Assembly (NCBI RefSeq): GCF_046119375.1
Contig: NW_027362770.1
Coordinates: 191,890,001 to 191,954,000 of the forward strand
Direction of reading: 5' to 3'
DNA from: Phyllobates terribilis
Lineage: Eukaryota
DNA: 64,000 nt
Shown here: positions 40,965 through 55,306 of the stretch, in pieces
Numbering within the stretch: the stretch's first letter is position 1
Layout: each line of letters opens with the position of its first letter
Notes under the pieces: model-generated
Database searches by the model: none
What the model saw: only the letters and a program-made list of their open reading frames with translations
What the model was told of the DNA's origin: nothing
Made by a program: the position numbers and the translations under genes

Positions 40965-41350
40965 AGCAGCAGTCACCGGGGAGGAGTCAGCTCTGTGACC
41001 GGATGTAACATCCTCGCTCGGGAAAATGACAGGAAAAAGGGCGGGAAATTCAACCTCCCCAACAGTTCTGTGCTCCGCCCACATCTGAGGAGAAGCCGCA
41101 GCTCCTGCTGCTGGGGGAGGGGCTGCTGACCGCCCTGTGCCCGGATGGCTGCAGTCTGCTCTGCGGGGACTGGGAACATCGGCCACTAAAGGGTTAACAC
41201 CAAGTGTCTGCGGGGAGGAGCTGATCCTGTGCTGCCTGTGGGCGGAGCCATAGCCCTACTGAGCGCTGATTGGCTGAGCGCTGAATATGAAATCCCCGCA
41301 CAACGGCTGATAGTTCCTCCCGCTCTTTGTTCTCCTCAGTGTAACACGTG
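40965..41350 (+). pseudogene. H4 ghost locus: upstream and downstream flanks joined, gene absent
   Basis: GCGGGAAATTCAA..AACAGTTCTGTGCTC resembles 46418-46453 and is joined at 41075/41076 to CGCCCACATCT..GCTCCTGCTGCTGGGG, which resembles 46968 onward. Confidence 0.75.
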
Positions 41351-41357
41351 GTGCAGA

Positions 41358-41930
41358 GCGCTATATGGAGGGTAATAACATCATGTGGCCGTATACAGCG
41401 CTATATGGAGGGTAATAACATCATGTGGCCGTATACAGCGCTATATGGAGGGTAATAACATCGTGTGGCCGTATACAGCGCTATATGGAGGGTAATAACA
41501 TCGTGTGGCCGTATACAGCGCTATATGGAGGGTGATAACATCGTGTGGCCGTATACAGCGCTATATGGAGGGTGATAACATCATGTGGCCGTATACAGCG
41601 CTATATGGAGGGTAATAACATCATGTGGCCGTATACAGCGCTATATGGAGGGTAATAACATCATGTGGCCGTATACAGCTCTATATGGAGGGTGATAACA
41701 TCATGTGGCCGTATACAGCGCTATATGGAGGGTAATAACATCATGTGGCCGTATACAGCTCTATATGGAGGGTGATAACATCATGTGGCCGTATACAGCG
41801 CTATATGGAGGGTGATAACATCATGTGGCCGTATACAGCGCTATATGGAGGGTAATAACATCATGTGGCCGTATACAGCGCTATATGGAGGGTAATAACA
41901 TCGTGTGGCCGTATACAGCGCTATATGGAG
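41358..41930. repeat. 40-bp minisatellite (about 14 copies)
   Basis: GCGCTATATGGAGGGTAATAACATCATGTGGCCGTATACA. Confidence 0.95.
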
Positions 41931-42369
41931 GTGTTATATAGCGGTATATGGAGGGTAATGTCAGTACTTGGCCATAGACAGCATCATCTGGAGGAATACA
42001 GCGCTATACTGAGTGTATACAGTATTGTATCATAGTATATAGCCCCATATGGATTTATACTGTACTATAGTGACACTATGTCCAGCACACTATGGCAGTA
42101 TACCGCAGGCTGGGGACATGTACAGACCATATGTGTGATCAGTGTCCGAGTTTCCCCTCTGCTTCCGTCAGCAGCGCCATTATAGCAGTGTACGGGGATA
42201 TGGAAGCACAATGACATCGGAGGCCGCAACTGCAGAAGACTCTTGTAGACATGATGTGACCCTTTCATGCGTTAGCGCATCCTGTAACCAGTGTGAACTG
42301 CGGACACCCAGCAGCACTTCATGGAGGAGAGAACCATGAGATTACTATGAGTTGTGCGGAGCTCACTTT

Positions 42370-42963
<594 letters not shown>

Positions 42964-43009: not shown

Positions 43010-43699
43010 ACCAAATCCTTCCACTAACGAGCCAATTCCTAAACTCCAGATCCTTCTGCCGCCTGGCTCCAGTGTTCTGCTGGTAATAGGTGGAGATGGT
43101 CCATCAACTCCTTCAGTTATGTGAGATTCATTCCTGGAAATCGAGTGGTCTCATAGGCGGAAATGGTTAATGTGACAAAAATACAAATCGCAGGGATGTC
43201 ATTGTCTTGTATTAGACATTTTTTCAGGGGATGCAGCTGCCCAGGGACTTGTTACATCCAGAGCTCCCCACTCCGTGATGACCCGTAGCGGTCGCCTGTC
43301 CTGACACCACGTGCCACATGGATGAAGGGGTTACTGCCTAACACTAATCTGGTGCTGACTGGGCGGAGCCATAGCCCTGCTTAGTGCTGATTGGCTGCCA
43401 ATGAATATGGAGTTCCCGCATAATGGTTGATGGTTACTTTCCTTTGTTCTCAGTGTAAAACGTGGTGTCAAGATGGCGGCTCTCAGGCTGTGAGTGAATA
43501 TTTGATATACAATATAGTCAGCACTATATCACCATGTGCTACAGTTTTAAGGGTAAACCGTATCCTATCGCTGTAGAGATCTATATGGAGGTATACAGTA
43601 ATAAATTTGCGTATAAAGCTTTATATGGGGTGTATACAACAATATGGATGATTAATGCACTACATGGAATGAGGCAATAAAGCGCTGTATGGAGGTATC

Positions 43700-44200
43700 C
43701 AATTATTTCTATAGCGCCAACATATTCAGCAGCATTGTACATGTTCACGTCAATTGTAAAGACATGATGAGAGGAGTGAGGGTCCTGCTGCTCACAAGAT
43801 TACAGGGAATAGGGTGGTCACAATAGGTAGAGTGTGCTTGTCATGTACGGTCCAGCCATCACAAGGCTTTTCATATAAAGCTGCATGATCCGGACTTCAT
43901 CCAGATACCCAGTGCTATTGGGTGCATGGAGGCTGTGGAGACAGATGAATAAGAGCGACAGATTCTAAGGAAATATCAGAGGGGGAGCGTTAGATTAATG
44001 AAGCATGGTGATCAGCGCATTCCAGAAACCTGGTGCAGCACAAGAGAAGTCCTGGATGAGAGAGTGGGAAATTCAGATTATGAAGGCTATTGTAAAATGG
44101 AGAGCATGGGTAAGGTAATAGACAAAGTATCCGACAGTGCATGGGTGGTAGAGAGCACTACATCACGGTGTACAGCACTATATGGCAGTATATAGCGCTA
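43700..44200 (-). mobile_element. L2 LINE 3' relic
   Basis: TATAGCGCCAACATATTCAGCAGCATTGTACA is the reverse complement of a typical amphibian L2 3' end; degenerate body follows. Confidence 0.5.
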
Positions 44201-44618
44201 TATCTTGTCTAGCAGTGATAATATGATTAAGAACTAGAGCACATCAGATTAGAAACGTACAATGTCCGCCCCACACCCCCAATTCATCACCTTCCTCTGA
44301 TCATATTCTCACTCATGTACAAGGTTTAATCCACTGTGAATGTGGACACAGTACTATATAGGGGGTATACAATATATACGGAGGATATACAGCACTAAAT
44401 GGGGGAGTATTCAGCAGTGTATGGGTGGTATACTGCACTATTTCTTAGTTTACAGCTTTATAAGAATGGAGGGCATATACACTATACAGCATATGACATT
44501 TATTGCACAATATGGTGTGTACATAGTGGGATAATTCATGCCCCTAGTGCTCTGCTCTTTGGGGACACGAGTGTTGGTAATTTCCCATCATTCATTAGTA
44601 TTTTGTCAATGTTCACAC

Positions 44619-44730
44619 CAGAGATCAGCGGCGCCAGCTCTTGTGGTGACAGAGAACTCTCTTATACAAGGTTTCCTGCGCCTTGTATAACCTGCTGCTG
44701 CCCCGCCTCCTCTCCTACCATTGGCTGGAT
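44619..44730 (-). pseudogene. H2A ghost: downstream element joined to the promoter, CDS and stem-loop deleted
   Basis: GAGATCAGCGGCGCCAGCTCTTGTGGTGAC (identical to 54095-54124) is joined at 44650/44651 to AGAGAACTCTCTT (resembles 54616 onward). About 491 bp are missing. Confidence 0.85.
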
Positions 44731-44880
44731 ATAAAGTCACCAATGGAAACAAGACTTGTGGAAACACCAATGAGCTGCAGTGGGCGGAGATTATTAGTGA
44801 ACATTGGTCACATGATTTTCTCACCCAATAGTACAGTGATCTGACAGCATTGCTCATTTGCATGGCCGGTCTATAAATAC
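44720..44880. promoter_or_regulatory. H2A/H2B bidirectional promoter, copy 1
   Basis: CCAAT boxes, octamer ATTTGCAT at 44856-44863, TATAAATA at 44872. Confidence 0.85.
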
Positions 44881-44923
44881 GGCCGCTCTGGGAGGAGCAG
44901 GATCATTATTCTTTCTCCAGTGA

Positions 44924-45325
<402 letters not shown>

Positions 45326-45356: not shown

Positions 45357-45398
45357 GGCTCTTCTAAGAGCCACCCACCCCGTCTACATCAGAGCTGT
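45357..45398 (+). terminator. Histone 3' stem-loop and histone downstream element (H2B copy 1)
   Basis: GGCTCT-TCTA-AGAGCC-ACCCA, then CAGAGCTGT. Confidence 0.92.
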
Positions 45399-46393: not shown

Positions 46394-46924
<531 letters not shown>

Positions 46925-46952
46925 TGCTTCTGTTCTGCTCTAACAACACAAA

Positions 46953-46968
46953 GGCTCTTCTCAGAGCC
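46953..46968 (+). terminator. Histone 3' stem-loop (H4)
   Basis: AAA-GGCTCT-TCTC-AGAGCC-GCCCA. Confidence 0.9.
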
Positions 46969-53632: not shown

Positions 53633-54104
53633 ATCTAAAACAAAGCCATCCATAACCTTTCTCCTCCATACATCTCCAAAATAATCTACCGATATCTTCA
53701 GTCTCCTCTCCTCCACACTTATTTGTTCCTCACCCAATTGCCGCAAAGACTTCTCCCGATTATCCCCCTTCCTCTGGAATTCTTTGCTCCAACATGTCCG
53801 ATTATCCACATTCGGATCCTTCAAACGTAACATGAAAACCCATCTCTACAAGAAATTTTACAACCTGCAATGACCCCGCTGCCACTGCAATCCCCCCACC
53901 TCCTCTCCAACCTACAGTCTCCTTCCCCATCATCCTGTAGAATATAAGCCTACAAAGGCAGGGTCCTCTTCTCTCTGTTCCAATCTATCATTGTTAGTTT
54001 ACATTCTGTAAGTAACCCCTCCTCATGTACAGTACAACACTATAGAATTAACGGTGCTATATAAATAATCTCTGCTATAGAACAGATAATTCCTGAGATC
54101 AGCG

Positions 54105-54149
54105 GCGCCAGCTCTTGTGGTGACGGTGTGGGTGGCTCTTAGAAGAGCC
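54105..54149 (-). terminator. Histone 3' stem-loop and histone downstream element (H2A)
   Basis: Minus strand AAA-GGCTCT-TCTA-AGAGCC-ACCCA..ACAAGAGCTG. Confidence 0.92.
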
Positions 54150-54184
54150 TTTGGGTTGTGTGGATGATACAGGATCAGCGGCGC

Positions 54185-54862
<678 letters not shown>

Positions 54863-54904: not shown

Positions 54905-55306
<402 letters not shown>

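What the first reader, a model, noticed from the sequence alone, without database searches (positions are those of the whole stretch)
44619..44700. Ghost H2A: deletion closely matching the mRNA body
Relative to the intact copy, 54125-54615 (491 bp) is missing. The deletion starts in the 5' UTR region (26 nt before the ATG) and ends about 4 nt past the expected 3' cleavage site after ACCCA. The U7-binding downstream element and the bidirectional promoter remain, and the latter still serves an intact H2B. An unpaired H2B can shift H2A:H2B dosage.
Basis: seen in the sequence. Interest (0 to 1): 0.7.

Follow-up and report, generated by a model that had tools for sequence, protein, structure and literature searches.

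The report
Deleted H2A gene beside intact H2B
In a frog histone gene cluster, one H2A gene has been removed by a 491-base deletion that left its promoter, its RNA-cutting signal and the neighbouring H2B gene; this is ordinary gene loss in a gene family known for it.

Summary
A 30-nt stretch at 44621-44650 is identical to the U7-binding flank of the intact H2A copy (54095-54124). Homology resumes at 44651 = 54616, so 491 bp are absent: 26 nt of 5' leader, the coding sequence, the 3' UTR, the stem-loop and 4 nt past the cleavage site.

It is not an assembly collapse. Contigs from three samples in two studies cross the junction with 0-1 mismatch, at single-copy depth.

Related frog assemblies have co-linear units with H2A intact at this position. 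The ghost's 3' flank aligns over 250 nt with the flank behind one of them. This is therefore an in-situ deletion.

Several intact paralogs have GTC at both breakpoints, so the junction sits on a 3-nt microhomology, as in end-joining repair.

The orphan H2A promoter arm carries 5 of the ghost's 9 private changes, including TATAAAA>TATACAA. Together these form a perfect 10-bp inverted repeat, which looks like a template-switch mutation.

H2B and its promoter elements are untouched.

The match to the mRNA body is approximate: 10-20 nt off at the 5' end and 4-7 nt off at the 3' end. A second ghost gene (H4) does not repeat the pattern at its 5' end.

The dosage effect is unsupported. I rate this as ordinary birth-and-death gene loss. 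Recurring breakpoints in the 3' processing signal are only a lead.

The parts
44621..44650 (-). Remnant of the H2A 3' flank, containing the U7-binding histone downstream element (minus strand GTCACCACAAGAGCTGGCGCCGCTGATCTC)
   Evidence: 30/30 identical to 54095-54124 behind the intact H2A; the 30-mer occurs only at these two places in the window. It is the only one of 21 such sites in the window plus fetched frog loci without a stem-loop in front.
44648..44653 (.). Deletion junction. GAC on the + strand (GTC in H2A sense) at 44648-44650 is a 3-nt microhomology that could come from either side.
   Evidence: Intact paralogs L021, L025, L027, L030 and L008 read ...TTCTCTGTCTGCTG in the 5' leader. 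Most intact copies, among them every one with a GTC leader except L021/L027 (ATC there), read ...CACACCGTCACCAC (L025 CACACTGTC) behind the cleavage site. The ghost reads TTCTCTGTCACCAC. Contigs from three samples bridge it.
44651..44661 (-). Remnant of the H2A 5' leader (minus strand GAGAGTTCTCT)
   Evidence: Aligns to the leader of intact copies; identical to the corresponding part of L030.
44662..44690 (.). Perfect 10-bp inverted repeat (44662-44671 / 44681-44690, 9-nt loop). It includes the mutated H2A TATA box (minus strand TATACAA, 44689 down to 44683).
   Evidence: the repeat finder; absent from the intact copy. Four of the five ghost-private changes in this arm lie in its two arms and the fifth (44673) in its loop.
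44691..44944 (.). Shared H2A/H2B intergenic promoter: CCAAT boxes, H2B octamer ATTTGCAT at 44856-44863, H2B TATA at 44872-44879, H2B 5' leader
   Evidence: Conserved column by column with 12 intact pairs; only three ghost-private changes, none in these motifs.
44945..45325 (+). Intact H2B coding sequence (126 aa) left without its H2A partner
   Evidence: ORF. No private substitution. Exactly this protein is encoded at 10 shown and more unshown places in another frog assembly.
45357..45372 (+). H2B 3' stem-loop, followed by its downstream element
   Evidence: sequence.
54125..54615 (-). Stretch of the intact reference copy that is missing in the ghost: 26 nt of leader, H2A CDS (54185-54589), 3' UTR, stem-loop (54134-54149), ACCCA, and 4 nt more
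54095..54124 (-). Downstream element of the intact H2A, counterpart of the ghost remnant

Best explanation
A small in-situ deletion removed one H2A gene from a divergent H2A/H2B pair in a dispersed ('jumbled') frog histone cluster.

The break in the H2A 5' leader was joined to a break just behind the 3' cleavage site at a 3-nt microhomology (GTC). This is what end joining of a double-strand break, or replication slippage, leaves behind. The deletion took the coding sequence and the stem-loop, so nothing that could make H2A remains.

The 30-nt downstream element and the H2A half of the promoter are leftovers without a job. The H2A core promoter has since, or at the same time, collected a cluster of private changes, including a TATA mutation. 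These changes form a perfect 10-bp hairpin, most simply explained by a template-switch mutation.

H2B, which needs the shared upstream elements, stays under constraint and is presumably still expressed.

Shown: the deletion, its reality in three samples, its polarity, the possible microhomology, the private mutation cluster, and intact H2B.

Inferred: the repair pathway, the start-site position, the lack of function of the remnants, and H2B expression.
For: - Exact 30-nt remnant and 491-bp gap.
- The ghost has no stem-loop.
- Junction-spanning contigs from X1, X2 and X8 at single-copy depth.
- Co-linear units L026 and L023 in a related assembly carry an intact H2A at the same position.
- The ghost's 3' flank aligns over 250 nt with the flank behind L026's H2A.
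- GTC is present at both breakpoints in several intact paralogs.
- 5 of 9 private changes fall in 40 nt of the H2A core promoter against 4 in about 750 nt. Fisher p = 3e-5 counted as sites, 0.004-0.03 counted as 2-3 events.
- These changes create a perfect inverted repeat, as described for template-switch mutations (PMC5453318).
- H2B has no private change and its motifs are kept.
- Single histone genes and H2A pseudogenes are usual in jumbled vertebrate clusters, under birth-and-death evolution (PMC13525598; bioRxiv 10.1101/720235).
Against: - The true ancestor of this unit is not available. The GTC microhomology rests on paralogs, and the copy in the same window has ATC, leaving only 2 nt.
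- A 3-nt microhomology arises by chance in roughly one junction in twenty.
- The TATA change sits in the arm that a simple template switch would use as its source, so at least one extra step is needed.
- No RNA evidence shows that H2B is expressed or that the orphan arm is silent.
- One end of the deletion lies within a few bases of the cleavage site. A purely random deletion would do that rarely.
Confidence: 0.8

Rival explanations
1. The deletion was shaped by a fragile site at the histone 3' processing signal. In this reading the DNA encoding the stem-loop and downstream element breaks or stalls replication repeatedly. The cause could be hairpin formation by the 16-nt palindrome, or clashes between transcription termination or R-loops and replication in S phase. 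Histone genes would then tend to be lost by deletions with one end there.
For: Three independent lesions have one breakpoint inside the roughly 45-nt 3' signal:
- This H2A deletion ends 4-7 nt past cleavage.
- The ghost H4 deletion ends at the last base of the stem.
- An H2B fragment in a related assembly (L010; a fragment with the same extent lies in L029, its junction not read) has an internal deletion ending in the loop of the stem-loop.

A duplicated H2A stem-loop plus downstream element lies in L019. Earlier unchecked notes of this scan report tandem arrays grown from downstream elements elsewhere in this genome.
Against: - There are only three events, found while looking for exactly this pattern, so there is no unbiased denominator.
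- In the H2A case the boundary could only be placed because it fell within the short conserved flank, which is an ascertainment effect.
- The stem is only 6 bp, which is weak for a cruciform.
- The 5' ends differ: leader, upstream promoter, and coding sequence. An R-loop footprint covering the transcript is therefore not supported.
- No paper found reports such a hotspot.
Confidence: 0.14
2. Assembly artefact or rare private allele: an intact H2A exists at this place and the assembly collapsed or skipped it.
For: In run X1, one contig that matches the 30-nt remnant continues into stem-loop sequence (loose end at 44650).
Against: - That loose end is what contigs of the intact paralogs must give, since they share the 30-mer.
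- Contigs of three samples from two studies pass from unique left flank through the junction into the promoter with 0-1 mismatch, at the depth of the flanks.
- The best holder may be the sample the assembly came from, but the other two samples belong to another study.
Confidence: 0.02
3. The remnant has a function of its own. Examples would be a short non-coding transcript from the orphan promoter arm, a decoy U7-binding site, or the new hairpin acting on H2B expression.
For: - The 30-nt downstream element is still identical to that of intact copies.
- A 151-nt contig of a run guessed to be RNA lies on 44631-44781.
Against: - At the divergence seen, 30 unchanged bases are not unusual; about 1 change would be expected.
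- The TATA box is damaged and the start region rewritten, the opposite of conservation.
- The contig has depth 2, covers promoter DNA upstream of any H2A start site, and comes from a run that also holds other intergenic pieces, so contaminating DNA explains it.
- Without a stem-loop, the downstream element is not expected to direct processing (established knowledge of SLBP/U7-dependent cleavage).
Confidence: 0.03

Closest known systems
Solitary histone genes and histone pseudogenes in jumbled vertebrate histone clusters (birth-and-death evolution)
   Same: One member of a pair is lost while the neighbour stays functional. Clusters in human, mouse, chicken, Xenopus tropicalis and zebrafish contain pairs, single genes and H2A pseudogenes (PMC13525598). 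Human has 17 H2A genes, 18 H2B genes and at least 17 pseudogenes (bioRxiv 10.1101/720235).
   Different: This is not a decayed reading frame. It is a clean excision that leaves both flanking control elements, so standard pseudogene definitions based on residual coding similarity would not list it at all.
Microhomology-associated end-joining or replication-slippage deletions
   Same: A single junction, no filler bases, and 3 nt shared by both breakpoints in several intact paralogs.
   Different: The pathway cannot be shown from sequence, and the microhomology depends on which paralog best represents the ancestor.
Short template-switch mutations that create perfect inverted repeats (Loytynoja and Goldman 2017, PMC5453318)
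   Same: A tight cluster of private changes whose net effect is a perfect 10-bp inverted repeat next to the source sequence.
   Different: The presumed source arm (the TATA box) also carries a private change, so a single switch does not explain everything. The order of events relative to the deletion is unknown.

Membership tests
Replication-dependent histone H2A gene | H2A coding sequence | tested here: not met
   No H2A coding sequence between 44621 and 44944; 54185-54589 has no counterpart.
Replication-dependent histone H2A gene | 3' stem-loop followed by ACCCA and a purine-rich downstream element | tested here: not met
   Only the downstream element is left; no stem-loop within 45 nt. The Rfam Histone3 model gives no hit here, though at its gathering threshold it detected only one of the five real stem-loops.
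Divergent H2A/H2B gene pair with shared promoter | Intact H2B with octamer, CCAAT boxes and TATA on one side | tested here: met
Divergent H2A/H2B gene pair with shared promoter | Intact H2A with its own TATA on the other side | tested here: not met
   The gene is deleted. TATAAAA has changed to TATACAA; this change is private to the ghost among 13 aligned copies, though L025 has a different TATA change, TATGAAA.
Microhomology-mediated deletion | Short identical sequence at both breakpoints, one copy kept, no filler | tested here: inconclusive
   GTC lies at both sites in L025, L030 and L008 (L021 and L027 have it in the leader only, with ATC behind the cleavage site), but the window's own intact copy has ATC/GTC. 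The ancestor is not available.
Deletion that follows the transcript (R-loop footprint) | Both ends coincide with the transcript's start and end, and the pattern recurs | tested here: inconclusive
   The 3' end is within 4-7 nt. The 5' end is about 10-20 nt from a start site inferred only from the TATA distance. The ghost H4 deletion begins upstream of the CCAAT box, so the pattern does not recur at the 5' end.
Assembly collapse | Independent read data contradict the assembled junction | tested here: not met
   Contigs of X1, X2 and X8 confirm the junction.
Template-switch mutation | A cluster of changes that is the reverse complement of nearby sequence | tested here: met
   44662-44671 is the exact reverse complement of 44681-44690. 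The private changes at 44666-44668 and 44685 lie in the arms.

The most novel reading that the evidence does not exclude
The DNA that encodes the histone 3' processing signal (stem-loop, cleavage site, downstream element) is a recurrent breakpoint in these frog genomes. It would drive both loss of histone genes, through deletions with one end there, and the tandem arrays of downstream elements that earlier notes report in the same genome. This ghost H2A would be one footprint of that fragility.
Probability: 0.14. Interest if true: 0.6.

Novelty: new member of a known kind. Interest (0 to 1): 0.25.

Why it matters
Mostly it does not. Losing one copy from a large, redundant histone family is expected, and one unpaired H2B among dozens of genes will not shift histone balance.

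Three smaller points have some value:
- It is a clean, read-verified example of how a histone gene can vanish without leaving a pseudogene that annotation pipelines would detect.
- It gives a natural experiment on half of a bidirectional promoter. The orphaned half decays while the half serving H2B stays fixed.
- Together with two other lesions, it gives a testable lead that the 3' processing signal may be a preferred breakpoint.

Tried and rejected
- **Decay of the leader.** I first read the indels between the ghost's leader remnant and the copy at 54 kb as decay. Alignment with 12 intact copies showed they are differences between paralog types; the ghost has the short leader type.
- **Ortholog in the closest related assembly.** L029 and L030 share the H4-H2B side and the tandem repeat beyond. 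They lack the H3 segment, so orthology stayed unclear. L026 and L023, from a more distant assembly, are the co-linear units.
- **Look-up by the ghost-linked H2B protein.** It returned only places in yet another frog assembly, all with H2A present. That did not help to date the deletion.
- **Other ghosts of this kind.** A scan of all fetched loci for further downstream elements without a stem-loop found none. A scan for truncated histone units found only the H2B fragment and cross-hits between stem-loops. Two apparent orphan stem-loops in L019 turned out to be an uncalled intact H4 and a duplicated H2A 3' end.
- **Rfam.** At its gathering threshold it detected only the H3 stem-loop, so it was not useful for the others.
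- **Transcription.** RNA evidence could not be obtained.
- **Sequences avoided.** I did not look up H3 or H4 proteins, because they are identical to human ones. I kept histone coding sequence out of the reads call.
- **Literature.** Searches on R-loops or transcription-replication conflicts at histone genes gave only general reviews.

Full report
**What is in the window.** ORF listing and a stem-loop search identify five replication-dependent histone genes:
- H3 (42553-42963, +)
- H2B (44945-45325, +)
- H4 (about 46613-46924, +)
- H2A (54185-54589, -)
- a second H2B (54926-55306, +)

Each is followed by the canonical 16-nt stem-loop. The rest of the window is repeats and transposon remains. 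Earlier unchecked notes of this scan call the genome a golden poison frog; I did not verify the species.

**The observation.** Global alignment of the two H2A/H2B units shows that 44621-44650 is identical at 30 of 30 positions to 54095-54124. That stretch lies just behind the intact H2A gene on the minus strand and contains the purine-rich element that pairs with U7 snRNA (CACAAGAGCTGG in H2A sense).

The 30-mer occurs only at these two places in the window, against none expected by chance. Homology resumes at 44651 = 54616 and continues at about 96% through the shared promoter, H2B and the H2B 3' signal to 45417 = 55398. The 491 bp at 54125-54615 have no counterpart.

I recounted the landmarks in the raw sequence:
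- The start codon is at 54589-54587.
- The stem-loop is 54134-54149.
- ACCCA ends at 54129.

I laid contigs of four public runs on 43050-44944, keeping coding sequence out of the call.
- X1: an 854-nt contig, 43922-44775, with no mismatch.
- X2: a 606-nt contig, 44170-44775, with no mismatch.
- X8: a 586-nt contig, 44190-44775, with one mismatch.

These run from unique left flank through the junction into the promoter. Their depths (55, 49, 71) match the single-copy flanks. X1 may be the sample the assembly was made from, but X2 and X8 are two further samples of another study.

The only hint of an alternative is one X1 contig that matches the 30-mer and continues into stem-loop sequence. Intact paralogs must give exactly that. 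The deletion is therefore real, and I saw no intact allele at this locus.

**Polarity and origin.** I looked up where exactly the intact H2A protein is encoded. This fetched loci from four other frog assemblies; none is the window's genome (best identity 95-97%).

In GCA_032444005.1, loci L026 and L023 are co-linear with the ghost unit. Their order is H2B, H2A, homologs of 44339-44199 and 43931-43788, H3 with its flanks, then the homolog of 41413-40773. H2A is intact in both. The ghost's 3' flank aligns over 250 nt with the flank directly behind L026's H2A. The ghost is therefore an in-situ deletion in a unit that once had H2A, not an empty site.

In all paralogs the conserved block ends about 35 nt past the cleavage site. 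The short left-hand homology within the window is thus the normal end of the conserved unit, not a peculiarity of the ghost.

**The junction.** In H2A sense the ghost reads ...AAGAGAGTTCTCT-GTC-ACCACAAGAGCTGG.

Five intact paralogs (L021, L025, L027, L030, L008) have ...AGAGTTCTCTGTCTGCTG in the leader. Most intact copies have ...CACACCGTCACCAC behind the cleavage site; L025 reads CACACTGTC and L021/L027 read ATC, so L025, L030 and L008 carry GTC at both sites. With such an ancestor, both breakpoints carry GTC and one copy is kept. That is a 3-nt microhomology without filler, as left by end joining or replication slippage. The window's own intact copy has ATC in the leader, which gives only 2 nt.

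The microhomology shifts the possible ends to 23-26 nt before the ATG and 4-7 nt past cleavage.

The same alignment corrected an early mistake of mine. The apparent indels in the ghost's leader are differences between paralog types, since the ghost belongs to the short-leader type. From the TATA distance, the inferred start site is only about 10 nt upstream of the junction in this type, and about 17-20 nt in the long type. The start site was not measured.

**The orphan promoter arm.** I aligned the ghost with 12 intact pairs from the H2B 3' flank to the H2A leader and counted changes private to each copy.

The ghost has nine private changes. Five lie in the 40 nt of the H2A core promoter and leader: 44666-44668, 44673 and 44685, the last turning TATAAAA into TATACAA. 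Four lie in the other 750 nt or so. None is in the H2B coding sequence, the octamer, the CCAAT boxes or the H2B TATA.

The clustering is significant when counted as sites (p = 3e-5). It still holds when counted as two or three events (p = 0.03 to 0.004).

The changes are not random. Together they make 44662-44671 the exact reverse complement of 44681-44690, a perfect 10-bp inverted repeat with a 9-nt loop that the intact copy lacks. Clusters of changes that create perfect inverted repeats are the signature of short template-switch mutations (PMC5453318). Because the TATA arm itself carries a private change, one extra step is needed, and I cannot order these events relative to the deletion.

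Either way, the H2A half of the promoter is no longer protected, while the H2B half is.

**How close is the match to the mRNA body?** The 3' end is very close. The 5' end is off by 10-20 nt from an inferred start site.

The 5' end had little freedom. A deletion that removes H2A but spares the elements H2B needs must begin within a stretch of some tens of bases. The 3' end is the more surprising one.

For context I looked at the ghost H4 flagged by the same reader. There the missing piece runs from just upstream of the CCAAT box (46457) to the last base of the stem (46967/8). It includes the promoter, so it is not shaped like an mRNA, but its 3' break again lies in the processing signal. That junction is spanned by contiguous alignments to loci of several assemblies, so it is old and is a single event.

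A third lesion is an H2B fragment in L010. A fragment with the same extent in L029 may be the same event; I read the junction only in L010. It has an internal deletion between two AAG triplets, and its 3' break lies in the loop of the stem-loop.

Three of three is suggestive. However, I found these events while looking for the pattern. In the H2A case the boundary could only be placed because it fell within the short conserved flank. A scan of the fetched loci found no further examples. I keep this as a lead, at about one chance in seven.

**What is known.** Jumbled vertebrate histone clusters contain pairs, single genes and pseudogenes, and are taken to evolve by birth and death under purifying selection (PMC13525598). 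The human catalogue lists 17 H2A genes, 18 H2B genes and at least 17 pseudogenes (bioRxiv 10.1101/720235).

An unpaired H2B is therefore ordinary, and the dosage argument has no support. The related assemblies show many H2A/H2B pairs within 20-kb stretches. Read depth over the shared 30-mer indicates several further H2A copies in this genome.

The slightly unusual point is the cleanness. With no coding remnant, similarity-based pseudogene annotation would miss this loss.

**Verdict.** The most likely mechanism is a small end-joining deletion followed by decay of the orphan promoter arm. It is a new example of a known kind of event and of low interest, apart from the untested possibility of a breakpoint hotspot at the histone 3' signal.

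**Limits.**
- No RNA data could be laid, so H2B expression and silence of the orphan arm are inferred.
- The start site is inferred.
- The ortholog in the closest relative was not identified.
- I deliberately kept H3, H4 and histone coding sequence out of the public look-ups and the reads call because of their likeness to human genes.

Noticed in passing
window 40965-41353, junction at 41074/41075; compared with 46457-46968: Ghost H4. The flanks of the H4 gene are present, but the stretch from just upstream of the CCAAT box to the last base of the stem-loop is missing. Contiguous alignments to loci of several frog assemblies span the junction, so the loss is old and part of the repeated unit.
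   Followed up: partly
L010:2040-2740; fragment of the same extent at L029:5437-5658: H2B fragment next to an intact H2A in a related assembly. An internal deletion of about 75 nt lies between two AAG triplets, running from near the end of the coding sequence into the loop of the stem-loop. The 5' part is replaced by sequence resembling a Tc1-type transposase.
   Followed up: partly
L019:2380-2830 (minus strand): In another frog assembly, the last part of the H2A 3' UTR with stem-loop and downstream element is present twice, about 290 nt apart. This is a duplicated processing signal.
   Followed up: no
window 44631-44781: A 151-nt contig (depth 2, no mismatch) of run X10, which is only guessed to be RNA, lies on the ghost remnant and promoter. 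It reaches only 20 nt past the junction and covers DNA upstream of any H2A start site, so contaminating DNA is the likely source.
   Followed up: no
window 43690-44073: Contig depth rises to thousands or even a hundred thousand in all runs, so a very high-copy repeat family lies between H3 and the ghost.
   Followed up: no
window 55133-55135 versus 45152-45154: The H2B of the intact pair has Leu where the ghost-linked H2B and other frogs' H2B have Ile (NDLFERI against NDIFERI). The unpaired H2B is the canonical one.
   Followed up: no
window 54185-54589; L022, L023, L026: The intact H2A has 134 residues with a lengthened tail (…[14 protein letters not shown]). Related loci also carry 128-residue H2A genes in the same clusters, and another frog has 130-residue ones.
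   Followed up: no
window 41357-41994; L030:10944-14518: An 80-bp tandem repeat beside the ghost H4 flank is expanded to about 3.5 kb at the related locus L030.
   Followed up: no
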